Under the pieces are notes generated by a model. That model saw only the letters and a list, made by a program, of their open reading frames with translations. It was not told the DNA's origin and searched no databases. The translations under genes were made by a program, and so were the position numbers. DNA of 63,590 nt, filler included, from Octopus bimaculoides (Eukaryota), in assembly GCF_001194135.2 (NCBI RefSeq). It is 5 parts of 5 records of this genome, joined end to end, with 100 filler letters (N's around TTAATTAATTAA, not from the genome) between each part and the next. Parts side by side here need not be neighbours in the genome. Positions count along the whole stretch, not along the records: positions 12,486 to 31,884 come from NC_068982.1; 4 more parts are not named here. One strand, 5' to 3'. Shown here one piece after another: positions 13,346 through 31,880 of the stretch. The first letter of the stretch is position 1, and each line of letters opens with the position of its first letter.

Positions 13346-13394
13346 ATATATATGTATATTCCGATAGGAGTNNNNNNNNNNATATATATATATG

Positions 13395-13790
13395 TATATT
13401 CCGATAGGAGTTCATATTTTGTTATTTGAAATGATTTTACACTGTTCATTCAAAGGGGTCTCCCTTTGAATGAACAGCACAAGGAATTAATATCTCCACA
13501 CTATGCATTTGAAGCCATGGACAAGAAGCCTCTCTACCCATTCTACACAACACATTCCTTGGATAATGGAACCACAACTATAACATCCAACATATTTTTA
13601 TTCTCATATTTCCCTTTGTACTTCCTATATCAATCCCTTTCCAAAATAACTTCTTATATTTCCTTCTGTTTAACTCTCTCATATTGTCTCTGATGATGGG
13701 ATATCCCTCATAACCCTCAAACAGCTGTAAGACTACCCCTCTCTTTATAAAATGTCCAAGAAATTTTATTTAACCTATATATATGGAGAG
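13395..13790 (+). mobile_element. probable Penelope-like element 3'/pLTR relic with decayed hammerhead
   Basis: GTCT-CTGATGA-...-(G)AAACAGCTGTA-AGAC at 13686-13733. Confidence 0.5.
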
Positions 13791-14545
13791 ACGTTTGTGT
13801 TGGTATGGTCATGTACTGCAGATGGGCGAGGAGAGCTGAGTGAAGAAGTGCCACTTACATTCAATGGAAGGAATCTGGGGTAGAGGAAGACCCTGGAAGA
13901 CATGGGATGAGGTGGTGAAGCATGACCTTCAAACATTGGGTCTCATAGAGGCAATGACAAATGACCGAGATCTCTGGAGATATTCTATGACTGAGAAGAC
14001 TTGGCAAATAAAGTGAGTTCACAGCTGTAACCTACACCAGCATCGCATAACCAGCACACTCAAAAGTACCTTGGATTGTAGGGTGACATGCCGTGCTTGA
14101 GGAGACCNNNNNNNNNNCTTGGATTGTAGGGTGACATGCCGTGCTTGAGGAGACCTACTGAGTCAAGTACATCAACATCAATATCAAAATCAAATCAAAT
14201 CACAATCAAATGGAAATTGTACTTGTGATGCTCGTGCTGGTGGCACGTAAAAAGCACCATCCGAACATGGCCGATTCCAGTGCTGCCTTGACTGACTTTC
14301 ATGCCGGTGGCACATAAAAAGCACCATCCAATTGTGGTCGATGCTAGCTCCTCTGGCCCCTGTGCCGGTGGCATGTAAAAAGCACCCATTACACTCTCAG
14401 AGTGGTTGGTGTTAAGAAGGGCATTCAGCTGTAGAAATACTGCCAGATCAGATTGGGGCCTGGTGCATCCTCCTGGCTTTCAGGTCCCCAGTCAAACCAT
14501 CCAACCCATGCCAGCATGGAAAACGGATGTTAAAGGATGATGATG
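13790..14545 (+). mobile_element. RTE-type LINE 3' end with 3'UTR and (GAT)n tail
   Basis: WYGHV..GRGRP.KTWDEVVKHDL-like coding end as at 18380-18599, then the shared tail. Confidence 0.8.
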
Positions 14546-15406: not shown

Positions 15407-16322
15407 CAGCACTGGATTAACCATTAAGCAAAATAAGCTCATGCTTAGGGCATCAAGGGAAAGAGGGGACACCACAGGAATGGTAAATGGTTTACGGCAC
15501 AAAAGAAATCACTTTAAACTTGCTAAAATAATATTCGGGGTGCCTTTATCTCTATTAAGTATAGATGCAGATGTGTTACCTAAGATTAATTTTGAGGATC
15601 TGACCAAAGACTTTGCCATCCAAAAATGTAGGAGGAAACATTTCAAATATAAATAAAGTGGAAGTATACAAAAATAAACATTATTTTCCTTCTTAATATT
15701 TTGTTTTGAAAAATAAAAATTTATTTTATGATTTGTTGTAGGAGTGGCTGTGTGGTAAGTAGCTTGCTTACCAACCACNNNNNNNNNNNNNNNNNNNNNN
15801 NNNNNNNNNNNNNNNNNNNNNNNNNNNNNNNNNNNNNNNNNNNNNNNNNNNNNNNNNNNNNNNNNNNNNNNNNNNNNNNNNNNNNNNNNNNNNNNNNNNN
15901 NNNNNNNNNNNNNNNNNNNNNNNNNNNNNNNNNNNNNNNNNNNNNNNNNNNNNNNNNNNNNNNNNNNNNNNNNNNNNNNNNNNNNNNNNNNNNNNNTATG
16001 TATGTGTTTGTGTGTCTGTGTTTGTTCCCCCCCCCCCACCAACATCGCTTGACAACCGATGCTAGTGTGTTTACATCCCCGTAACTTAGTGGTTCAGCAA
16101 AAGAGACCGATGGAATAAGTACCAGGCTTACAAAGAATAAGTCCTGGGTTTGATTTTCTCGACTAAAGGCAGTGCTCCAGCATGGTCACAGTCAAATGAC
16201 TGAAACAAGTAAAAGAGTAAAGAGTAAAGAGTTTATATTTTGAATTACATAATCTTTTATGGGGGGGGGGCACCAAAATCTTTTCAGTGTTTAGGACCTC
16301 AATGGGTTTTAATCCGGACCTG
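15407..16322 (+). mobile_element. non-autonomous hAT deletion derivative
   Basis: TIRs CAGCACTGGATTAA / TTAATCCGGACCTG; 8-bp TSD ATCATCAA (15399-15406, 16323-16330); internal LSLLSIDADVLPKINFEDLTKDFAIQKCRRK resembles a hAT dimerisation-domain C-terminus. Confidence 0.8.
15741..16232 (+). mobile_element. SINE family C (gap in its internal microsatellite)
   Basis: Head GGAGTGGCTGTGTGGTAAGTAGCTTGCTTACCAACCAC; tail matches 6680-6890. Confidence 0.8.
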
Positions 16323-16729: not shown

Positions 16730-16960
16730 ATACACACACACACACATATATCTATACATATACATATACACACACATACACACACACACACACACACATA
16801 TATCTATACATATACATACACACACACACACACACATATATCTATACATATACATACACACATATATATCTATACATATACATACACACACACACACACA
16901 CATATATCTATACATATACATACACACACACACACACACATATATCTATACATATACANN
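16730..16960. repeat. higher-order (CA)/(TA) compound repeat
   Basis: Recurrent unit ACACACACACATATATCTATACATATACAT. Confidence 0.85.
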
Positions 16961-17189
16961 NNNNNNNNNNNNNNNNNNNNNNNNNNNNNNNNNNNNNNNN
17001 NNNNNNNNNNNNNNNNNNNNNNNNNNNNNNNNNNNNNNNNNNNNNNNNNNNNNNNNNNNNNNNNNNNNNNNNNNNNNNNNNNNNNNNNNNNNNNNNNNNN
17101 NNNNNNNNNNNNNNNNNNNNNNNNNNNNNNNNNNNNNNNNNNNNNNNNNNNNNNNNNNNNNNNNNNNNNNNNNNNNNNNNNNNNNNNNN

Positions 17190-17330
17190 NGGCATTAGGA
17201 AGAGCATCCAGCTGTAGAAACTGTGCCAAATCAGATTGGAGCCTGGTGTAGCCACCTGGTTCACCAGTCCTCAGTCAAATCATCCAACCCATGCTAGCAT
17301 GGAAAGCGGACGTTAAACGATGATGATGAT
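17190..17330 (+). mobile_element. RTE 3' tail copy
   Basis: GGGCATCCAGCTGTAGAAAC..CCAACCCATGCTAGCATGGAAAGCGGACGTTAAACGATGATG-type tail. Confidence 0.85.
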
Positions 17331-17363: not shown

Positions 17364-19000
17364 ATGGCTTTCGTTGACATGGAGAAAGCCTTTGACAGGG
17401 TCCCTCGATCCCTTATCTGGTGGTTAATGAGTAAACTAGAGATAGAAGAATGGTTAGTGAGAGCTGTGCGAGCCATGTACAGAGATGATGTTAGTAAGGT
17501 GAGGGTTGGCAACGAGTACAGTGAAGAATTCTGGGTAGAGGTAGGGGTCCACCAAGGTTCAGTCCTCAGTCCCCTCCTATTTATCACAGTCCTCCAGGCA
17601 ATAATACAGGAATTCAAGACAGGATGCTCCTGGGAGTTCCTCTATGCTGATGGCCTTGCACTAATTATTGAGTCACTATCAGAACTAGAGGAGAAGTTTC
17701 AGGTGTGGAAGCAAGGACTAGAATCGAAGGGCCTTAGAGTCCACCTAGCTAAAATCAAAGTCCTAATAAGTAGGAAGGTAGACAAAACACGAACCCCTTC
17801 AGTTAGATGGCCCTGCTCAATCTGTAGAAAAGGTGTTGGTAGAAACTCTATAAGATGTAAACAGTACAAGCTATGGACACATAAGAGGTGCAGCAATATC
17901 AAAGGAAGGCTAACTAGCAAGATAGTTTTTGTATGTGGCAGATGTTCAGGAGCAATAAACACTGAAAATGTGCAGAGAACAACCTTTGCCACATTCCAGG
18001 GAGAAAAACTAGACATAGTTGATAGCTTCTGCTACCTAGGAGACCAAGTTAGTAGTGGGGGAGGGTGCACTGAAAGTGTAGCTGCTAGAATAAGAATAGC
18101 CTGGGCAAAGTTCAGAGAGCTCTTACTTCTGCTGGTGACAAAGGGCCTCTCACTCAGAGTAAAAGGCAGACTGTATGACGCATGTGTATGAACAGCCATG
18201 CTACATGGCAGTGAAACATGGGCCGTGACTGCTGAGGACATGCATAAGCTCGCAAGGAATGAAGCCAGTATGCTCTGATAGATGTGTAATGTCAGTGTGC
18301 ATACCCAACAGAGAGTAAGTATCTTGAGAGAAAAGTTAAACCTAAGAAGCATCAGTTATGGTGTGCAAGAGAGACAATTGCGTTGGTATGGTCATGTGGC
18401 GAGAATGGATGAGGATAGCTGTGGGAAAAAGTGTCACACCCTAGCGGTTGAGGGAACCTGTGGAAGAGGTAGACCCAGGAAGATCTGGGATGAAGTGGTG
18501 AAGCCTGACCTACGAACATTAGGTATCACCGAGGCAATAATTTGTGATCGAGACCTTTGGAAATATGCTGTGCGTGAGAAGACCCGGCAAGCCAAGTGAG
18601 ACCATAATCTGAGGCCTCTGCCAGAGGTGTAGCCAGCCCACTTATACATACCTTTCCTTCATTGAATACTAAACTCTGCTTGCGAAGACCTGGTGAGGCA
18701 AATGAAATCGAAATCAAACCAAATTTGACGACTGGCACCCATGCCAACCTCTCCTTCATTGGACACTAAACTCTGCTTGCGAAGACCTGTTGGGGCAAGT
18801 GAAATCGAAATCATGATGGCATGAGCACTGACCAAGCGTGATCATTGCCAGAGCAGCTCTCTGGCTCCCATGCCAGTGGCACATACATAGCACCATTTGA
18901 GCTTGATCATTACCAATGTCGCCTTACTGGCCCTTGTGCCGGTGGCACATGAAAAACACCATTTTGAGCATGGCCGTTGCCAGTACCACCTGACCGGCCT
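17364..19000 (+). mobile_element. 5'-truncated RTE-type LINE: RT C-terminal half with PHD-like insert, 3'UTR
   Basis: FVDMEKAFDRVP, HQGSVLSPLLF, LYADG (YADD decayed), FCYLGDQ, LRWYGHVARM, GRGRPRKIW; in-frame stops at ~18189 and ~18276. Confidence 0.92.
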
Positions 19001-20780: not shown

Positions 20781-22320
20781 TACAGGGTGTTCAAGTTGAA
20801 TTTGACAATTTGCATAAAAGGAAAAGGAAACACAATATCACATGATCATCGTCATTTAATACCTGTTTTCCAGGCTGGCATGGGTTGGACAGTTTGACTG
20901 AAGTCTGGAGAGCCAGTGGCCGCACTAGGCTCTACTCTGATCTGGCAATGTTTCTACAGCTGGATGCCCTTCCTAAAGCCAACCACTGCAAGAGTGTAGT
21001 GGGTGCTTTTTATGTTCTACTGGCACGGGAGCCACTCAGGCAGCACTGGCATTGGCCATGTTTGGATGCTACTTTTTATGTGCCACCAGCACAGGAGCCA
21101 GTCAGGTGGCACTTGCATCTCATCCAAAAATGAAAGTATTTTAGAATATCAAAAAAATATCAACTAGATTATAGCTGGGGGATAACTGTTTACACTAAGT
21201 AACCACCCCTAGCTTCCACCATAGCCTCAAGATGGCCCTTGAACCTGGCACATGTATTCCTCTCTGTGTCCCTGGGAAGATCTTCGAACACGTCCTTAAT
21301 CATGGCCACCAGCTCAAGCTTTGTGTTGTCGGCAGAGCAGGCTTTCTCAATTGCACTTGATGCATATGTTGTTGTTGGCACTCCATCGCTTACGACGTCG
21401 AGGGTTCTGGTTGATCCGATCAACGGAACAGCCTGCTCATGAGATTAACGTGCAAGTGGATGAGCACTCCACAGACACGTGTACCCTTAACGTAGTTCTC
21501 GGGGGTATTCAGCGTGACACAGAACGTGACAAGGCTGGCCCTTTGAAATACAGGTACAACAGAAACAGAAAGTAAGAGAAAGATGTGGTGAAAGAGAACA
21601 ACAGGGTTCACCACCATCCCCTGGCGGAGCCTCGTGGAGCTTTAGGTATTTTCGCTTAATAAACACTCACGACGCCCGGTCTGGGAATTGAAACCGCTAT
21701 CCTATGACCACGAGTCCGCTGCCCTAACCACTGGGCCATTGCACCTCCACTCACCTGATGCATAGTAATGCATGGGATTACAATCAGAGAAATTAGCAGA
21801 CTGGAAATTGGGGCTGGTGAAGTCAAGGAAATTCTCCAACAACCACTTCTGAATCTTTCTGGAAGTATGGCAAGGGGCCAAAACCTGCAACTCCCTATAT
21901 GGTTTTCCAGCAGCAACCCTTTCCAGCTAGGGTTTGACCACTCTCTCCAGCAGCTTCACATAGTTCTCTGAACTGAGCCCTAAGGCTCTGTTCATCAGTT
22001 GTTGAATGAATCCTGCATGTAGACACAGTCAGAATGCCTGCTGTCACCCTTTCTGCTGGCCATGGCTTCAGAGTCTCCATTGCAGCTATCCATATCACAC
22101 TTACAACCTTTACAATGTTCACATAGCATTGAATAGCAGTCATAATGTTGGCATTTTCACACCCAGCATGAATCATCATCAGACAGGTAACTCTTTTCCA
22201 ATGTTCAGATGGCTCTATGTCAACTAACTTTAACATTTATCCTCTCCAACACCGCTGACTGTTCGTCAATAAATCATTCTGTTCTTGGAAAAAGGAGACG
22301 TAAAAATGCTTACATTATAG
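20781..22320 (-). mobile_element. Tc1/mariner-superfamily transposase relic interrupted by an RTE tail (20850-21115) and a SINE
   Basis: APCHTSRKIQKWLLENFLDFTSPNFQSANFSDCNPMHYYA resumes after the SINE as SSAIEKACSADNTKLEL..ARFKGHLEAMVEARGGY; TACAGGGTGTTCAAG TIR-like at 20781. Confidence 0.75.
21367..21751 (-). mobile_element. SINE family A
   Basis: Full copy; 13-bp TSD CACTTGATGCATA (21354-21366) / CACCTGATGCATA (21752-21764). Confidence 0.9.
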
Positions 22321-23745: not shown

Positions 23746-24296
23746 ATACATGTGATGTAATCCTTTTAAAATGATTTCTAAGAAGTAACTAATGAACATA
23801 TTAGTTTGCAGAATATTTCCTTCTGTTCCAGGGTAAATGCTACTCATGGGACAAGACAATCTAGAACAGCAAGAACAACAAACATAAGGCTTCAGCAATA
23901 GAACAAAAGAAAAGTTAAACAAGATGGAAGTGCTTCAAAAACAAATATTAAACAAAAAAAAAAAACAAGGAATTAGCAACCACAATAAAGACATTCTAAA
24001 AACAAATCTGCTTCAAAAATAATTTTGTTTCTAATAACAAGTAATTTCTTACACAGGTTCGAGGCCTCCTTCAAATTTGGGGAAGATATAGTCTTTTGTT
24101 TCAGTCACTGGATTGTGGCCATGCTTGGACACCACCTTCAAGAGTTTAGTTCATAGGTTCTCAAAGTGGGTGCTACCGCCCCCGGTGGTCATTGAGAGGG
24201 CCCAGGTGGGTGCTGATGTCTAAAGGGCGGGGTAGAGAAAAAGGAGGAAGTGGATTGGAGGACACTATGAATTTATAATATTATTATAGTACTGTA

Positions 24297-24597
24297 TTGG
24301 GCCTCACCGAGGCGATGACTACTGACCGAGACCTTTGGAAATGTGCTGTGCGTGAGAAGACCCGGCAAGCCAAGTAAGATCGTTGCCAGTGCCCCTGGAC
24401 TGGTTCTTGTGCGGGTGGCACATGAGATGCACCATTTTGAGCGTGGCCGTTGCCAGTACTGCCTGACTGGCTCCCGTGGGATTTTCGAGCGAGATCGTTG
24501 CCAGTGCCCCTGGACTGGCTTGTGCGGGTGGCACATAAAAGACACCATTTCGAGCGTGGCCGTTTTCGTGCGGGTGACACGTAAAAGCACCCACTAC
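24297..24597 (+). mobile_element. RTE 3' end and modular 3'UTR (runs into gap)
   Basis: GAGACCTTTGGAAATGTGCTGTGCGTGAGAAGACCCGGCAAGCCAAGT as at 18550-18598. Confidence 0.85.
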
Positions 24598-25204
24598 NNN
24601 NNNNNNNNNNNNNNNNNNNNNNNNNNNNNNNNNNNNNNNNNNNNNNNNNNNNNNNNNNNNNNNNNNNNNNNNNNNNNNNNNNNNNNNNNNNNNNNNNNNN
24701 NNNNNNNNNNNNNNNNNNNNNNNNNNNNNNNNNNNNNNNNNNNNNNNNNNNNNNNNNNNNNNNNNNNNNNNNNNNNNNNNNNNNNNNNNNNNNNNNNNNN
24801 NNNNNNNNNNNNNNNNNNNNNNNNNNNNNNNNNNNNNNNNNNNNNNNNNNNNNNNNNNNNNNNNNNNNNNNNNNNNNNNNNNNNNNNNNNNNNNNNNNNN
24901 NNNNNNNNNNNNNNNNNNNNNNNNNNNNNNNNNNNNNNNNNNNNNNNNNNNNNNNNNNNNNNNNNNNNNNNNNNNNNNNNNNNNNNNNNNNNNNNNNNNN
25001 NNNNNNNNNNNNNNNNNNNNNNNNNNNNNNNNNNNNNNNNNNNNNNNNNNNNNNNNNNNNNNNNNNNNNNNNNNNNNNNNNNNNNNCAACCTTGGGAGAA
25101 TGTAAGGTCAAGCTGACCTCAGCAAGATTTGAACACAAAACATACAAAGAACATACAAATACCACGTGGCATTTTGTTTGACGCTCCTGTGATTTTGCCA
25201 ACCC

Positions 25205-25420
25205 ACCTATTATTTTTTTCTACTCTAGGCACAAGGCCTGAAATTTTTGGAGAGGGAGACCAGTCGATTAGATCAACCCCAGTATGCAACTGGTACTTAA
25301 TTTATCGACCCCGAAAGAATGAAAAGCAAAGTCGGCCTCGGCGGAATTTGAACTCAGAATGTAAAGACAGACGAAATACCGCTAAGCATTTCATCCGGTG
25401 TGCTAACATTTCTACCAGCT
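25205..25420 (-). mobile_element. SINE family D
   Basis: Antisense family D body and head. Confidence 0.8.
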
Positions 25421-25671
25421 CACCACCTATTATTACAACCACATCATATATCCTGTCTGTGTGGTGGATAGACAGTACAAGTTCAAGAGACAAATATAGA
25501 TTCTTTTTGAAGTTCATCAAACAAAGACAAAATGGTAAACGTGGTCAGAATATGTAATTTAAGGTGACAAACTGGCAGAATCGTTACTCTGCCAGGAGAA
25601 AGTATTTCTTCCAACATTATCTTCTCATTATTTACATTTGACAGATATTTGTCCTCATCTTGTTTGTTGTT

Positions 25672-25717
25672 AACACGATGTTTCAGCTGATATACCCTCC
25701 AGCCTTCATCAGGTGTC
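25672..25717 (-). ncRNA. minimal type I hammerhead ribozyme motif (left arm)
   Basis: Minus strand: GACAC-CTGATGA-A-GGCTG-GAGGGTATAT-CAGCT-GAAACATC-GTGTT. Confidence 0.6.
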
Positions 25718-26087
25718 TTGGGGTAATTTTGAACCTGGGTTCTCATTCAATGTTGTTATTATCATTATCATTATTCAGGTCACTGCTTGGAATCGAACTC
25801 GGAATCTTGGGGTTAGTAGCCCATGCTCTTAACCAGTACGCCATATGCCTATGGGCAATTATGGAGTGAATTTTAAGGCTTATAAATCTAATATTTTTCT
25901 ATCCTTCCTTAATATTAGATTTATAAGCCCTAAAATTCACTCCATAATTGCCCACAGGCATATGGTGTAGTTAAGAGCACGGGCTACTAACCCCAAGATT
26001 CCGAGTTTGATTCTAAGCAGTGAACTGAACAATAATAACATCGAAAAATACCTTAGGAATGAGAACCCAGGTTCGAAATTTCTCCAA

Positions 26088-26133
26088 GACACCTGATGAA
26101 GGCTGGAGGGTATATCAGCCGAAACATCGTGTT
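26088..26133 (+). ncRNA. minimal type I hammerhead ribozyme motif (right arm)
   Basis: GACAC-CTGATGA-A-GGCTG-GAGGGTATAT-CAGCC-GAAACATC-GTGTT; predicted cleavage after C26128. Confidence 0.6.
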
Positions 26134-26459
26134 AACAACAAAGATGAGGACAAATATCCGTCAAATGTAAATAATTCGTCATCTCTTAAATATAGAACTG
26201 TTTTGTTCTCAGTTGAAATGTTGCTGGGGTTGATTTCATCCTTTCGGGGTTGATAAAGTAAGTACCAGTTAACCTCTGAGGTTGATGTAATTGACTTACC
26301 CACCTACCCTGAAATCACTGGCCTTGTGCCAAAATTTGAAACCAATATACGTAATGCACTAAGTGTCTGTGTATATATAATATTTTTTGTAACACTTCAG
26401 CGTTTGAAGCTATTGGATTTGTTGCACTTTATGAGACTTATTTTCTAAACCATGAATCG

Positions 26460-26935
26460 TTGGCCGACACGCCGTGCTTGAAGAGACCTTTTGTGTCAAG
26501 TAAAATCAAAATGGAACTGGTGGCCGATGCCATTGCCACCGAGCTGGCTCCCATGCTGGTGACATGCAATAAGCACCATTCATGCATGGGTCGTTGCCAG
26601 TACCACCTGACTGGCTTCCCATGCCGGTGGCCCGTAAAAAGCACCATCTGAACATGGTTGATGCCAGCCAACAGCCCCCACCCCCCCGGCTCCTGTGCTG
26701 GTAGGATGTAAAAAGCACCACCCGTACATGGCTAATGCCAGTGCCACCTGACTGGCTCCCATGCTGGTAGCACATAAAAAGCACTCACTACACTCTCGGA
26801 GTGGTTGGTGTAAGGAAGGGCATCCAGCTGTAGAAACCTTACCAGATCAGATTGGAGCCTGGTGCTGCCTCCTGGCTTGCCAGTCCTCAGTCAAACCGTC
26901 CAACCCATGCCAGCATGGAAAACATGATAATGATG
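26460..26935 (+). mobile_element. RTE 3'UTR with tandem modules and tail
   Basis: Repeated CCCATGC(C)GGTGGCAC(G/A)TAAAAAGCACC modules, then the shared tail. Confidence 0.8.
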
Positions 26936-27467: not shown

Positions 27468-28113
27468 GGATCTTTTTTAAAACGGGGGCCACATTTTTCA
27501 TTAATGTTTTACGTAGTGTTTTTGGTACCGAAAGACTTTCAAACTTTGTATACTTATCTATTTTGTGTTATAGAACAGAAAAATATTTTTGTATTCGAAT
27601 TTATTTCATGTAAAAAATTGTCTTATTTCGATAATTTCAACCAATCACTGATAAGTATTCAGTTGTTTATATTTACTCCTTTGACTGATTAAGCCATAGC
27701 TTCGTTTTATTTGCTTTTTACCTTTTAAANNNNNNNNNNNNNNNNNNNNNNNNNNNNNNNNNNNNNNNNNNNNNNNNNNNNNNNNNNNNNNNNNNNNNNN
27801 NNNNNNNNNNNNNNNNNNNNNNNNNNNNNNNNNNNNNNNNNNNNNNNNNNNNNNNNNNNNNNNNNNNNNNNNNNNNNNNNNNNNNNNNNNNNNNNNNNNN
27901 NNNNNNNNNNNNNNNNNNNNNNNNNNNNNNNNNNNNNNNNNNNNNNNNNNNNNNNNNNNNNNNNNNNNNNNNNNNNNNNNNNNNNNNNNNNATTTCTTTT
28001 TTTTTAAAGAAGACTAAGAGAAAAAGATGTTTTATATGACACATTCTACCAGTGTTCCAAGTTTCAAAGTGTTTCGTTAAAGAAAAATGTGGCCCCCGTT
28101 TTAAAAAAGATCC
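27468..28113. mobile_element. MITE with ~32-38 bp TIRs and 8-bp TSD (Merlin-like), inserted in an RTE tail
   Basis: TIR GGATCTTTTTTAAAACGGGGGCCACATTTTTC at both ends; TSD CTGGTGAA at 27460-27467 and 28114-28121. Confidence 0.85.
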
Positions 28114-28389
28114 CTGGTGAAACCGGATGGCTACACCAGGCTCCAATCTGATTTGGCAGAGTTTCTACAGCTGGATGCCCTTCCTAACGCCAACCACTCT
28201 GAGAGTGTAGTGGGTGCTTTTACGTGCCACCGGCACGAAGGCCAGTCAGGCGGTACTGGCAACGGCCATGCTTAAAATGGTGTATTTTATGTACCACCTG
28301 CACAGGAGCCAGTTCGGCGGCACTGGCAACGATCTCACTCGAATGTCTTTACACATGCCATCCGGCACAGAAATTAAATCTGGCAGCAA

Positions 28390-28640
28390 CAGAAAAGATG
28401 TATTCATACCAAGAGTGAATTTAACTCCAGGTGATACATCATTACCTTTTAATTTGAAAAGGAGGCATTTCTCTGTTATCTCTTCGTTTGCTATGACTAC
28501 AAATAAGTCACAGGGTCAATTATTTGAAATTATTCGGAGTATAGCTTCCAAAGACAGTGTTTAGCCATGGTCAACTCTATGTTGTTTTAAACAGAACAAT
28601 AAACACGAACAATTTGCAATTACAGACTGAAAATTCAGAA
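28390..28640 (+). mobile_element. Helitron helicase C-terminal relic (second family)
   Basis: KDVFIPRVNLTPGDTSLPFNLKRRHFSVISSFAMTTNKSQGQ, frameshift, FSHGQLYVVLNR. Confidence 0.85.
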
Positions 28641-29357: not shown

Positions 29358-29383
29358 ATATNNNNNNNNNNNNNNNNNNNNNN

Positions 29384-29647: not shown

Positions 29648-30340
29648 TTAATAACAGATACATATTTCATTGAGAGATGTGATAGGCGTTCGACATACAA
29701 TACAAACATGATTAACATTTATAACAGTCTTGGCACATTTCAAACATAAGCAGACGTGTCCACAGGGAAGAAAAAGAGCACTTCGGTCGTTTTGAAAACA
29801 CAACACGCACTTTAGAGAAAGGTTGTCTCTGTTGTGGTTAATACTTTGGTATTGTAGTAGGTTGTTATATACATCACCATTGTTCCTGGTATTTTGTTGG
29901 TTGGAACGGTTTGGGGTAACATTAGCAGCAGATGTACGGAAGAAATTCTCCACAGTGGAACAGATCCATGATAGTATTAAATATATAGGCAAAGAGAAAA
30001 GGATTTTTTGTAACGTGATCCATTTATAAAAACACTTTATAAACATAGAAACAGATGTAACAATGTAATCACATATGAACATTAAATAACCGATGAAGCT
30101 GACAGGAAGGAAATGGCCGCAACCTAAAGTGTCGACGACTCTCAGAAAATCCTGGTAATGGTCCTGGAATAATTCCACAAACATCTGTCGGATGATCACA
30201 TAAAGCGGTTTGAAAGTTACACCCCAAACGTGATTGATGCTTTCCCCAAGGGTGGAAGGAATATAAGTAATGACGAAGCAAAAGACATTTACAATGACTA
30301 AAATATGAATTAAGTTACCAATTAATCTCGCAAATCCCAT
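29648..30340 (-). CDS. intronless membrane-anchored RING-HC (C3HC4) E3 ubiquitin ligase-like protein, 230 aa (RNF26-like architecture)
   Basis: Uninterrupted 693-nt ORF from first in-frame ATG (the supplied ORF starts at GTG 30355); C-terminal CVLC-x11-C-G-H-x2-LC-x2-C-x10-CIVC; three hydrophobic N-terminal stretches; ATTAAA ~50 nt past the stop. Confidence 0.8.
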   Translation of the reverse strand: MGFARLIGNLIHILVIVNVFCFVITYIPSTLGESINHVWGVTFKPLYVIIRQMFVELFQDHYQDFLRVVDTLGCGHFLPVSFIGYLMFICDYIVTSVSMFIKCFYKWITLQKILFSLPIYLILSWICSTVENFFRTSAANVTPNRSNQQNTRNNGDVYNNLLQYQSINHNRDNLSLKCVLCFQNDRSALFLPCGHVCLCLKCAKTVINVNHVCIVCRTPITSLNEICICY

Positions 30341-30819
30341 TTTAAAGCCATTCACATGGTGGTGGTGCCAAAGATTTTGGCAAAAGTCCTTTTTTTTTTT
30401 TGTTTAGGAAGAATCAGTTAGACAATTGAACACAGGAACAACTTACTGAAGTTGTTTGTAAAATTGGAGACGGATTTTGAATTGTCGTTATCCGAAACGA
30501 AAAAATAATTTTACATTTAATAAATAAAGTTAGATTATAAAAAAGAACACTTCATGAATATGAAATAATAATTTTATTCGCAATCTGTTTACTGTTTACC
30601 AGCACCGCTTTCTCTCTTTCTTTTTCTTTTGGACCATTCTTTGAAAAACTTTCACTCTGAGAATTGAAAAAAAAGTATACATCTGTAGCTGGAACGAAAA
30701 TTTTTAGAGACATTGTGTAATGCTTTCCCTCGCTACAGAAGGATTTCGAATTAGATATTTAAATAATCAGTATATTAAATACGTACTGAACTAACTTCAC
30801 TATTATTCTTAATGTGAAT

Positions 30820-31257: not shown

Positions 31258-31660
31258 TCTTTTACTTGTTTCAGTCATTTGACTGCAGCCATGATGGAGC
31301 CCCATCTTTAGTCGAACAAATCGAACTCAGGACTTATTCTTTGTAGGCCTAGTACTTATTTTACTGGCCTCTTTTGCCTAACCACTTAGTTGTGGGGACA
31401 TAAACACACCAACATCGGTTGTCAAGCGATGGAGAGGGGACAAACACAGACACACAAATACATATAAATACATGCAGATAGGAAAGCCTTCTCTTTTCTG
31501 TCGAGGGCTTTTATGCCCCTTTATTAGACAATTTTCCTTAGTCATTGCACGGTGATCACCATAAGCGTTAAGCGTATATAAAAGTCACTTGCTCAAGGTG
31601 CCACACAGTGGGACTGAACCCAGAACCATGTGGTTTGGAAGCAAGCTTCTTACCACACAC
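31258..31660 (-). mobile_element. SINE family C
   Basis: Matches 6680-7072. Confidence 0.75.
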
Positions 31661-31704
31661 CCACTTCTGCACCTCTCTCTCTCTCTCTCTCTCTGTATAT
31701 ATAT

Positions 31705-31880
31705 ATCGCCTGACTGGCCCTCGTGCCGGTGGCATGTAAAAGCACCCACTACACTCTTGGAGTGGTTGGCGTTAGGAAGGGCATCCAGCTGTAGAAACTT
31801 TACCAGGTCAGATTGGAGCCTAGTGCAGCCAGTCAAACCATCCAACCCATGCCAGCATGGAAAGCGGACGTTAAACAATG
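31705..31880 (+). mobile_element. RTE 3' tail copy
   Basis: Shared tail sequence. Confidence 0.85.

What the first reader, a model, noticed from the sequence alone, without database searches (positions are those of the whole stretch)
26088..26133. Minimal hammerhead ribozyme downstream of a tRNA-type pol III promoter (both arms)
Seen: stem I GACAC/GTGTT, core CTGATGA plus one extra A, stem II GGCTG/CAGCC with a 10-nt loop, GAAA, and AUC cleavage triplet; mirrored at 25672-25717 (-). Stem III is only A-CA-U, too short for a monomer. If the family consensus is ACGT (one CpG transition away) it is a palindrome allowing dimeric cleavage; as written (ACAT) a dimer would carry mismatches, so these copies may be inactive. 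Established precedents: Schistosoma Sm-alpha tRNA-related repeats with hammerheads (Ferbeyre et al. 1998); dimeric minimal HHRs of PLEs. Inference: a self-cleaving SINE/retrozyme-like RNA family.
Basis: partly seen in the sequence, partly recalled or inferred. Interest (0 to 1): 0.85.

Follow-up and report, generated by a model that had tools for sequence, protein, structure and literature searches.

The report
Decayed hammerhead ribozyme in octopus retroelement
The two mirrored motifs are real but mutated copies of a minimal, dimer-dependent hammerhead ribozyme carried by a short non-coding retroelement family of octopuses, which inserts in the head-to-head style typical of Penelope-like elements; this is a new example of a known kind of self-cleaving mobile RNA.

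Summary
A hammerhead descriptor finds only these two sites in the piece, against 0.001 expected from shuffles. Rfam finds no hammerhead, but it also misses genuine Penelope-element hammerheads used as controls. A covariance model built from 11 unrelated minimal hammerheads ranks the two sites first (E=6e-5 and 8e-4).

Translating the motif's sense frame and searching protein space recovered the family. One hit is from Octopus bimaculoides. About 11 DNA copies come from a related cephalopod, and a tandem form comes from an unidentified eukaryote.

The family consensus is a perfect minimal hammerhead with an ACGU helix-III palindrome. Core nucleotides are 93% conserved against 77% elsewhere. There is no covariation within the family, but clear covariation between families.

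Copies share one 3' end, are 5'-truncated at varied points, and in 6 of 8 informative loci have an inverted partner. That is the insertion signature of Penelope-like elements. The tRNA-like module has good A and B boxes but no cloverleaf, and it lies inside the unit rather than at its start. No self-cleavage was tested. This is a new member of a known kind.

The parts
26088..26133 (+). Right-arm minimal hammerhead motif. Helix I GACAC/GUGUU, core CUGAUGA plus an extra A, helix II GGCUG(G)/(U)CAGCC, GAAA, helix III A-CA-U. Predicted cleavage after C17 (26128|26129).
   Evidence: Sequence; descriptor hit with 0.001 expected by chance; covariance model R1, 23.2 bits, E=6e-5.
25672..25717 (-). Left-arm copy of the same hammerhead motif. 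G10.1-C11.1 is weakened to G.U by CpG->TpG.
   Evidence: covariance model R1, 19.5 bits, E=8e-4.
25911..26175 (+). Right arm: one 5'-truncated copy of the retroelement unit. Order: leader, tRNA-like module, A/T-rich variable linker, conserved box, hammerhead, tail ending in GTAAATAAT.
   Evidence: Inverted repeat. Homologous copies L069-L082 end at the same 3' position.
25627..25910 (-). Left arm: the inverted partner copy. Its 5' end includes the 15-nt 'spacer' 25896-25910, which read on the minus strand (AAGGAAGGATAGAAA) matches the sequence upstream of the leader in copy L081+.
26176..26200 (+). 25-nt tail extension (TCGTCATCTCTTAAATATAGAACTG) present on the right arm only. It is shared with the L082(-) copy and, in translation, with the O. 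bimaculoides copy.
   Evidence: 31/36 identity to L082; P0003 ...NSSSLKYRT. Penelope-element insertions often carry a 30-40-bp tail at one end only (PMC8557442).
25789..25843 (-). tRNA-type internal promoter-like module of the left arm: A box 25833-25843, B box 25789-25799.
   Evidence: 1 mismatch each, 33-nt spacing, 0.003 expected per piece. The A box is a perfect consensus match in the rough family consensus I assembled by eye from the alignment.
25963..26014 (+). Decayed right-arm copy of the A box (25963-25972, with a 3-nt deletion) and the B box (26004-26014, AGTTTGATTCT).
   Evidence: Arm alignment.
26057..26079 (+). Conserved box GAATGAGAACCCAGGTTCGAAAT just upstream of the hammerhead. 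It contains a second B-box-like GGTTCGAAAT and is present in all family copies.
   Evidence: Family alignment.
26134..26175 (+). 3' tail AACAACAAAGATGAGGACAAATATCCGTCAAATGTAAATAAT. It is conserved across the family and partly in the tandem form on L083. The terminal 9-mer GTAAATAAT is duplicated in several copies.

Best explanation
The two motifs are mutated genomic copies of a genuine minimal type-I hammerhead ribozyme of the kind carried by Penelope-like elements (PLEs). It belongs to a roughly 270-300-bp non-coding retroelement family of octopods.

Unit layout, 5' to 3': leader; a tRNA-derived module with A and B boxes; an A/T-rich linker; a conserved box; the hammerhead; and a ~45-nt tail ending in GTAAATAAT repeats.

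Inferred life cycle: a source copy is transcribed, possibly from the internal pol III-type boxes or by read-through. Two hammerheads in one multimeric RNA, or on two RNAs, pair through the ACGU palindrome to make a 4-bp intermolecular helix III, and each cleaves after position 17. The RNA is reverse-transcribed from its fixed 3' end by a PLE reverse transcriptase/GIY-YIG endonuclease supplied in trans.

That process typically leaves a 5'-truncated copy plus an inverted 5'-truncated partner. Here the result is a near-symmetric 549-bp palindrome made in a single event.

Since insertion, the arms have diverged by about 5%, mostly by CpG transitions. One of these had already turned ACGU into ACAU, which destroys the dimerisation palindrome and favours a misfold. 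The locus is therefore a dead relic.

Shown: the motif, the family, its consensus, preferential core conservation, and the insertion architecture. Inferred: self-cleavage, dimer use, pol III transcription, and PLE mobilisation.
For: Motif significance.

Family: a translated search gave 22 hits, including UniRef A0A0L8FV75 from Octopus bimaculoides. DNA copies were fetched as L069-L083.

Consensus: GACAC CUGAUGA A GGCUGG..UCAGCC GAAA CGU U GUGUU, a perfect minimal hammerhead.

Core conservation: core positions 92.9% against 77% for the rest (Fisher 2.7e-6); 95% against 78% without CpG columns. In three partner copies that played no part in the search, 32/33 against 96/132, p=0.002.

Same core in real PLEs: a metagenome scan found the same core in elements encoding RVT_1 + GIY-YIG (L011). 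It also found it ~100 nt downstream of a GIY-YIG ORF between tandem copies (L025, L044), and in L052 with the same inverted-arm layout.

Cross-family support: helix I complementarity 3.56/5 against 2.16+-0.16 for permuted partners. GAAAC is followed by GU plus H17 in 6 independent families.

Architecture: a common 3' end, variable 5' ends (q12, 13, 52, 61, 121-146), and an inverted partner in 6 of 8 informative loci. A one-sided 25-nt tail is present. These match the published PLE insertion structure (PMC8557442) and hammerhead features (PMC4209133). Penelope elements are reported in octopus genomes (PMC8967140).

Energetics: the ACGU self-duplex is -1.7 kcal/mol; ACAU forms none. The window copy's lowest-energy fold pairs GAUG with CAUC (-14.6 against -12.0 for the ribozyme-competent fold).
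Against: - No Rfam hammerhead hit even at E<=10. This is weak evidence, because control PLE hammerheads are missed too.
- No compensatory changes within the family.
- No PLE coding remnant in the 19.4-kb piece or in the fetched family loci, and no autonomous partner sharing the 3' end could be sought.
- Family copies were found through a translated search of the motif region, which could bias conservation estimates. The Logan contigs are short assemblies, in which inverted repeats can be artefacts.
- Published minimal PLE hammerheads cleave poorly in vitro.
- Target-site duplications were not convincingly identified.
Confidence: 0.72

Rival explanations
1. It is a classical tRNA-derived SINE. 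It is transcribed by pol III from the tRNA-like head and mobilised by a LINE, and it happens to carry a hammerhead (a strict Sm-alpha-type reading).
For: A and B boxes with correct spacing. There is no TTTT on the sense strand anywhere in the unit. Octopus genomes are rich in tRNA-derived SINEs (PMC8967140).
Against: At least 4 independent copies (window, L081+, L082+, L069+) carry 58-73 nt of conserved leader upstream of the tRNA-like start, so the copied RNA did not begin at the pol III start site. There is no cloverleaf. There is no poly(A) or LINE-like tail. Inverted head-to-head partners occur in 6 of 8 loci. The hammerhead is of the PLE minimal type.
Confidence: 0.12
2. It is a non-LTR retrozyme: a unit of about 265 nt that exists as tandem or circular RNA. 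The arm boundaries (AATATT... / ...AATAAT) would mark one full turn of a circular or multimeric template.
For: A related hammerhead-plus-tail module occurs as 120-129-nt tandem repeats on L083 and in proteins P0005 and P0017. Unit size lies within the 170-400 nt reported for animal retrozymes (PMC7229834). A 2026 preprint links animal retrozymes to PLEs (10.64898/2026.07.22.740005).
Against: No tandem direct copies of the octopus unit were seen in the window or in the Logan loci. Copies show variable 5' truncation rather than unit-length boundaries. L081+ continues upstream of the window's arm start.
Confidence: 0.1
3. It is a chance hammerhead-like string inside a DNA-level inverted duplication or foldback. 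Any function would be as a long hairpin, for example a small-RNA precursor.
For: The palindrome folds as a long hairpin and gives sub-threshold Rfam hits to plant and animal miRNA precursor models.
Against: Every miRNA hit is far below its gathering score and simply reflects the hairpin. Chance expectation of the motif is 0.001. The family consensus is a better hammerhead than the window copy. Inverted pairs recur at other loci with different junctions.
Confidence: 0.04

Closest known systems
Minimal hammerhead ribozymes in the pseudo-LTRs of Penelope-like elements (Cervera & de la Pena 2014, PMC4209133; Lunse et al. 2017 from my own knowledge)
   Same: Type I topology, 5-bp helix I, an unpaired nucleotide between A9 and G10.1, and G10.1-C11.1. 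Helix III is reduced to a short palindrome, so the motif must dimerise. It lies ~40 nt from the element's 3' end. Inverted 5'-truncated partner copies are present. The core string is identical to that in RT+GIY-YIG elements found here.
   Different: No PLE ORF is attached; the unit is short and non-coding. It carries a tRNA-like A/B-box module upstream. The palindrome is broken (ACAU) in the window copies.
Schistosoma Sm-alpha repeats (Ferbeyre et al. 1998; cited in PMC4209133)
   Same: A ~300-bp dispersed repeat that combines a tRNA-related pol III promoter-like head with a downstream type-I hammerhead having a very short helix III.
   Different: Sm-alpha carries a canonical hammerhead with loop-loop tertiary contacts and is active; the octopus motif is the minimal PLE type. 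Sequence homology was not tested because no Sm-alpha sequence was available. In the octopus unit the tRNA-like module is internal.
Animal non-LTR retrozymes (Cervera & de la Pena 2020, PMC7229834; Li et al. 2026 preprint 10.64898/2026.07.22.740005)
   Same: Short non-autonomous elements with type-I hammerheads, proposed to depend on PLEs. A tandem relative exists on L083.
   Different: Retrozymes are defined by tandem direct repeats and circular RNAs. The octopus copies seen here are solo or inverted pairs, and no RNA data are available.
TRIMp3 / Helenus and Ajax elements (Kojima 2024, PMC10886601)
   Same: Non-autonomous retroelements with a tRNA-like pol III-type sequence embedded in their terminal repeats; also found in a mollusc.
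   Different: Those are LTR retrotransposons without ribozymes.

Membership tests
Hammerhead ribozyme (general definition) | Conserved core CUGANGA ... GAAA with U16.1 and H17 at the cleavage site | tested here: met
   All core positions are present in both arms.
Hammerhead ribozyme (general definition) | Three helices around the core, with helix III stable in cis | tested here: not met
   Helices I (5 bp) and II (5-6 bp) are present. Helix III is a single A-U pair closed by CA.
Hammerhead ribozyme (general definition) | Match to the Rfam hammerhead covariance models | tested here: not met
   No hit at E<=10 on 531 nt or on 19.4 kb. Genuine PLE hammerheads and all family copies are missed too, so this result is uninformative for the minimal class.
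Hammerhead ribozyme (general definition) | Site-specific self-cleavage | not testable with these tools
   Requires in vitro transcription.
PLE-type minimal hammerhead | Helix I of 4-5 bp, an unpaired nucleotide between A9 and G10.1, and a G10.1-C11.1 pair | tested here: met
   The left arm has G.U at 10.1-11.1.
PLE-type minimal hammerhead | Palindromic 15.1-16.1 segment that allows an intermolecular helix III | tested here: not met
   Both window copies read ACAU, which forms no self-duplex. The feature is met in the family consensus (ACGU).
PLE-type minimal hammerhead | Recognised by a covariance model built from other minimal hammerheads | tested here: met
   R1 was built from 11 motifs with different helices. 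The window sites are the top two hits, E=6e-5 and 8e-4, with rough calibration.
PLE-type minimal hammerhead | Second copy in the same orientation nearby (tandem), so that a dimer can form in one transcript | tested here: not met
   The only second copy is inverted. Tandem copies are seen only in the distant relative L083.
Penelope-like element insertion (non-autonomous derivative) | Fixed 3' end, variable 5' truncation, and an inverted 5'-truncated partner at the 5' side | tested here: met
   Window palindrome, plus L072, L082, L069, L081 and L083: 6 of 8 informative loci.
Penelope-like element insertion (non-autonomous derivative) | Short tail extension at one end only | tested here: met
   25 nt at 26176-26200, absent from the left arm and shared with L082(-) and P0003.
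Penelope-like element insertion (non-autonomous derivative) | 3' end shared with an autonomous RT + GIY-YIG element of the same genome | not testable with these tools
   No cephalopod genome could be searched. There is no PLE remnant in the piece or in the family loci.
tRNA-derived SINE | Internal A and B boxes at tRNA-like spacing | tested here: met
   Left arm: 1 mismatch each, 33-nt gap, 0.003 expected by chance.
tRNA-derived SINE | Head recognisably derived from a tRNA (cloverleaf or tRNA model) | tested here: not met
   ARAGORN finds nothing, even on a rough family consensus. Two decayed single copies gave inconsistent calls at 70% thresholds. No Rfam tRNA hit.
tRNA-derived SINE | Copies begin at the pol III start, just upstream of the A box | tested here: not met
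   A conserved leader of 58-73 nt precedes the module in the window, L081+, L082+ and L069+.
Animal non-LTR retrozyme | Tandem direct repeats of a 170-400-nt unit, each with a hammerhead | tested here: not met
   Only an inverted pair here. L083 has 120-nt tandem units of a distant relative.
Animal non-LTR retrozyme | Unit-length circular RNA | not testable with these tools
   No RNA data available.

The most novel reading that the evidence does not exclude
Octopods harbour a chimeric 'ribozyme SINE'. A tRNA-derived pol III promoter module has been fused to the hammerhead-bearing 3' end of a Penelope-like element. A pol III transcript would then be self-processed by a dimeric hammerhead and copied by PLE reverse transcriptase. 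This would make it the first PLE-dependent SINE outside flatworms, in a lineage whose genome expansion is dominated by SINEs. Intact copies could be a source of small self-cleaved or circular RNAs in octopus tissues.
Probability: 0.25. Interest if true: 0.6.

Novelty: new member of a known kind. Interest (0 to 1): 0.42.

Why it matters
This extends hammerhead-bearing, PLE-type non-autonomous retroelements to cephalopods. It also gives a second lineage, after schistosome Sm-alpha, in which a tRNA-type promoter module and a hammerhead share one short repeat.

If intact copies exist, the family offers a tractable test of three questions. Do minimal hammerheads work as dimers in vivo? Do PLEs have SINE-like parasites? 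Do octopus tissues express ribozyme-processed small RNAs?

For genome annotation, it explains a class of short palindromes in octopus DNA. It also shows that Rfam-based scans miss this ribozyme class.

Tried and rejected
- Rfam scans of the piece, of the 531-nt core region, of control PLE loci and of family copies gave no hammerhead or tRNA hit. The many miRNA-family hits are sub-threshold and caused by the palindrome or by (TA)n/(TG)n repeats.
- ARAGORN found no tRNA at default thresholds in the piece, in 59 metagenome loci, or in a rough family consensus of the tRNA-like module. At 70% thresholds only two decayed single copies (L082+, L072+) gave calls, and those disagreed with each other.
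- There is no further copy of the unit in the 19.4-kb piece by blastn or nhmmer.
- Exact-pattern scans with flank-based or unit-specific patterns were empty or chance in viral contigs (18, 42), metagenome contigs (28) and prokaryotic genomes (40, 41).
- Word-indexed protein searches with the sense and antisense ORFs found nothing. The exhaustive HMMER search then succeeded.
- The orthologous locus could not be reached through the neighbouring RING-finger ORF. There is only an 87%-identical homologue on 1.5-kb contigs.
- Within-family covariation is absent.
- Target-site duplications: only weak T-rich similarity at the candidate boundaries, so I make no claim.
- A/B boxes were not found upstream of the hammerheads in the metagenome PLE families, except for one weak case.
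- An alternative register with a 3-bp cis helix III (ACA/UGU) was rejected because it abolishes helix I.
- Nearest-neighbour modelling of the dimer is only indicative, because a 4-bp intermolecular helix is marginal in any case.

Full report
OBSERVATION

The sequence at 26088-26133 (+) reads GACAC-CUGAUGA-A-GGCUGG-AGGGUAUA-UCAGCC-GAAA-CA-U-C|GUGUU. The reverse complement of 25672-25717 is the same except for CAGCU.

C17 is at 26128.

A descriptor of my own finds these two sites and nothing else in 19.4 kb. It gives 0.001 hits per piece in 1000 dinucleotide shuffles.

The two sites are the arms of one 549-bp palindrome, 25627-25895 and 25911-26175 with a 15-nt spacer. They therefore count as one event. 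Outside a variable A/T-rich linker the arms differ at 12 of 236 sites. Ten of these are transitions, mostly at CpG, and K2P is 0.053. The piece has 37% G+C and CpG observed/expected of 0.48.

KNOWN-FAMILY SCANS

Rfam gives no hammerhead hit even at E<=10 on 531 nt. I checked whether that negative result means anything.

The same scan also misses hammerhead motifs that lie in genuine Penelope-like elements, and it misses every family copy. This class is simply not modelled in Rfam.

I then built a covariance model from 11 minimal hammerheads found in unrelated animal-derived metagenome contigs. These have other helix sequences and were not selected with the octopus pattern. The model ranks the two window sites first and second: 23.2 bits, E=6e-5, and 19.5 bits, E=8e-4. 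The alignment requires a 2-nt deletion in helix III.

THE SAME CORE ELSEWHERE

A metagenome scan for CTGATGAAGGCTG-N6-14-CAGCYGAAAC returned 63 loci, where I roughly estimated about one by chance. They fall into about eight eukaryote-like families plus three bacterial-looking chance hits. Features that the pattern did not demand recur:

- GAAAC is followed by GU and then H17, giving an ACGU palindrome, in six families. Two large families show A, G or C at the position after GAAAC where the window has A; their helix III is in fact the longer ACAUGU palindrome.
- Helix I is complementary with many different sequences: 3.56 of 5 positions paired against 2.16+-0.16 for permuted partners, with 0 of 2000 permutations as high.

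Three of these families are demonstrably Penelope-like elements (PLEs):

- L011 encodes RVT_1 plus GIY-YIG.
- In L025 and L044 the motif lies ~100 nt after a GIY-YIG ORF and before the next tandem ORF.
- L052 has a GIY-YIG C-terminal coding segment flanked by 148-nt inverted arms, each carrying the hammerhead ~35 nt from its outer end.

This agrees with the published description of PLE hammerheads (PMC4209133) and PLE insertion structure (PMC8557442).

FINDING THE FAMILY

DNA-pattern scans and word-indexed protein searches failed.

The sense strand of the unit is open in one frame through the hammerhead (...KTPDEGWRVYQPKHRVNNKDEDKYPSNVNN). An exhaustive HMMER search with this 41-residue translation found 22 spurious 'proteins'.

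- One is UniRef A0A0L8FV75 of Octopus bimaculoides. This places the family in octopods. Before this hit I had already guessed octopus from other repeats in the piece, from memory.
- Nine others gave DNA. Loci L069-L082 are Logan contigs from the run series SRR118693xx, which also holds an 87%-identical homologue of the window's RING-finger ORF. L083 is a 154-kb ENA contig of unknown origin.

WHAT THE FAMILY SHOWS

(a) Consensus. The majority consensus of the motif is GACAC CUGAUGA A GGCUGG AG AGUAUA UCAGCC GAAA CGU U GUGUU, a perfect minimal hammerhead with an ACGU palindrome. At the position where the window has A, 7 of 12 independent copies have G, 4 have A and 1 has T. One of the G copies shows the complementary TG decay. 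In protein space the same polymorphism appears as PK-R (CGU) against PK-H (CAU), with R more frequent.

(b) Decay. Many copies have broken cores: CTGACAA, CTAATGA, CCGATGA, TTGATGA, GAGA, AAAA and TAAA. There are no compensatory changes; 74.4% of cells are paired against 73.8% in shuffles. Most copies are therefore decaying relics.

(c) Core conservation. The 11 core positions are nevertheless 92.9% conserved against 77% for everything else (Fisher 2.7e-6). Without CpG columns the figures are 95% against 78%. The translated search could bias this comparison. I therefore repeated it on three inverted partner copies that played no part in the search: 32/33 against 96/132, p=0.002. This pattern is expected if differences among copies partly reflect divergence of active source elements whose ribozyme core was under selection.

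(d) Ends. All copies end at the same 3' position (...GTAAATAAT, often duplicated). Their 5' ends vary, at unit positions 12, 13, 52, 61 and 121-146.

(e) Inverted partners. Six of eight loci where the 5' junction can be seen carry an inverted, 5'-truncated partner, usually abutting. These are the window, L072, L082, L069, L081 (290 nt apart) and L083. L072 is another near-symmetric palindrome with a different junction.

(f) Tail. The right arm has a 25-nt extension (26176-26200) that the left arm lacks. It recurs in L082(-) with 31/36 identity and, in translation, in the O. bimaculoides copy. A one-sided tail of this kind is described for PLE insertions (PMC8557442).

(g) Spacer. The 15-nt central 'spacer', read on the minus strand, matches the sequence upstream of the leader in L081+. 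The left copy is therefore simply 15 nt longer at its 5' end.

THE tRNA-LIKE MODULE

The left arm has an A box and a B box with one mismatch each, 33 nt apart, against 0.003 expected per piece. In a rough family consensus that I assembled by eye from the alignment, the A box is a perfect match. No cloverleaf is recognised by ARAGORN, even on that rough consensus, nor by the Rfam tRNA model.

The module is internal. A conserved 58-73-nt leader precedes it in at least four independent copies. The reverse-transcribed RNA therefore did not start at a pol III initiation site just upstream of the A box.

The distant tandem relative on L083 has the hammerhead and a homologous tail but no tRNA-like part. 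This suggests a modular origin. Pol III transcription of the unit is possible, since there is no TTTT on the sense strand, but it is untested.

ACTIVITY OF THE WINDOW COPIES

- ACGU can self-pair (-1.7 kcal/mol); ACAU cannot.
- The G->A change also stabilises a competing fold in which GAUG of the core pairs with CAUC: -14.6 against -12.0 kcal/mol for the ribozyme-competent fold. In the consensus the gap is only 0.6.
- The only neighbouring copy is inverted, so a single transcript cannot contain two sense hammerheads. A read-through transcript would fold into a long hairpin.
- The left arm has also lost the G10.1-C11.1 pair.

These two copies are very likely inactive.

CONCLUSION

The refinement concerns the carrier. 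It is a short non-coding unit that inserts like a Penelope-like element: fixed 3' end, 5' truncation, inverted partner and one-sided tail. The tRNA-type promoter module is internal to it.

The unit is closest to PLE minimal hammerheads and, in architecture, to schistosome Sm-alpha and animal retrozymes. I could not test self-cleavage, pol III use, RNA circles, or the existence of a matching autonomous PLE in octopus. I found no paper describing this cephalopod family, but curated repeat libraries could not be consulted.

Noticed in passing
window 13684-13735 (+): A second, different hammerhead-like relic: GUCU|CUGAUGA|U|GGGA-UA-UCCC, then a 10-nt insertion, then CAAA instead of GAAA, the 8-nt palindrome ACAGCUGU, A17, and AGAC pairing with GUCU. 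It is the third-best hit of covariance model R1 (14.7 bits, E=0.02). It is probably the remnant of another PLE-type element.
   Followed up: partly
window 25211-25324 and 26234-26347: Two copies of another repeat (…CATCCTTTCGGGGTTGATAAAGTAAGTACCAG…), 75% complementary and in inverted orientation. They flank the palindrome asymmetrically. From memory this is the abundant octopus SINE, and the copies look like independent insertions.
   Followed up: no
window 26521-26784: Three to four ~70-nt direct repeats (TGCCAGTGCCACCTGACTGGCTCCCATGCCGGTGGCACGTAAAAAGCACC…), 65-92% identical. Similar 'GTGNG…' ORF translations occur at 24273-24590, 28214-28564 and 31585-31878, so this is a dispersed repeat of the genome.
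   Followed up: no
window 17364-18599 (+): Fragmented LINE-type reverse transcriptase ORF (RVT_1, E=1.5e-17, followed by a weak PHD-like zinc finger). It is not a Penelope-type RT.
   Followed up: partly
window 29648-30355 (-): 230-aa ORF ending in a C3HC4 RING finger (PF13920, E=4e-14). Its only database relative is 87% identical, on 1.5-kb Logan contigs from runs SRR11869384, SRR11869390 and SRR11869391. It is probably a host gene exon.
   Followed up: partly
window 21694-21748 (-): Another A-box/B-box pair (TGGCCCAGTGG … GTTTCAATTCC, 33-nt gap). It is probably the head of a different tRNA-derived SINE.
   Followed up: no
window 13372-13381, 14108-14117, 15779-15996, 16959-17190, 24598-25086, 27730-27991, 29362-29383: Assembly gaps (runs of N, 1243 in total) inside the piece. 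Several are next to (TA)n/(TG)n microsatellites, which produce spurious mir-297/mir-1277-type Rfam hits.
   Followed up: no
L083 10040-10380 (ENA contig ctg114829l, unknown eukaryote): A distant relative of the hammerhead-plus-tail module arranged as two ~120-nt tandem units preceded by an inverted 5'-truncated unit. Related spurious proteins (P0005, P0017) show three or more tandem 129-nt units. There is no tRNA-like module.
   Followed up: partly
L007-L067 (metagenome families 1 and 2, and secondary motifs): Contigs whose sample ids look, from memory, like insect-gut metagenomes hold many minimal hammerheads with a 6-nt ACAUGU helix-III palindrome and very diverse helices I and II. Some copies have G at position 17. 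L023 has an 8-nt AUCUAGAU palindrome.
   Followed up: partly
L052 1-650 (metagenome): A textbook PLE insertion: a 148-nt inverted 3'-end fragment abuts a 5'-truncated copy that still encodes the GIY-YIG C-terminus, and both arms carry the hammerhead.
   Followed up: yes
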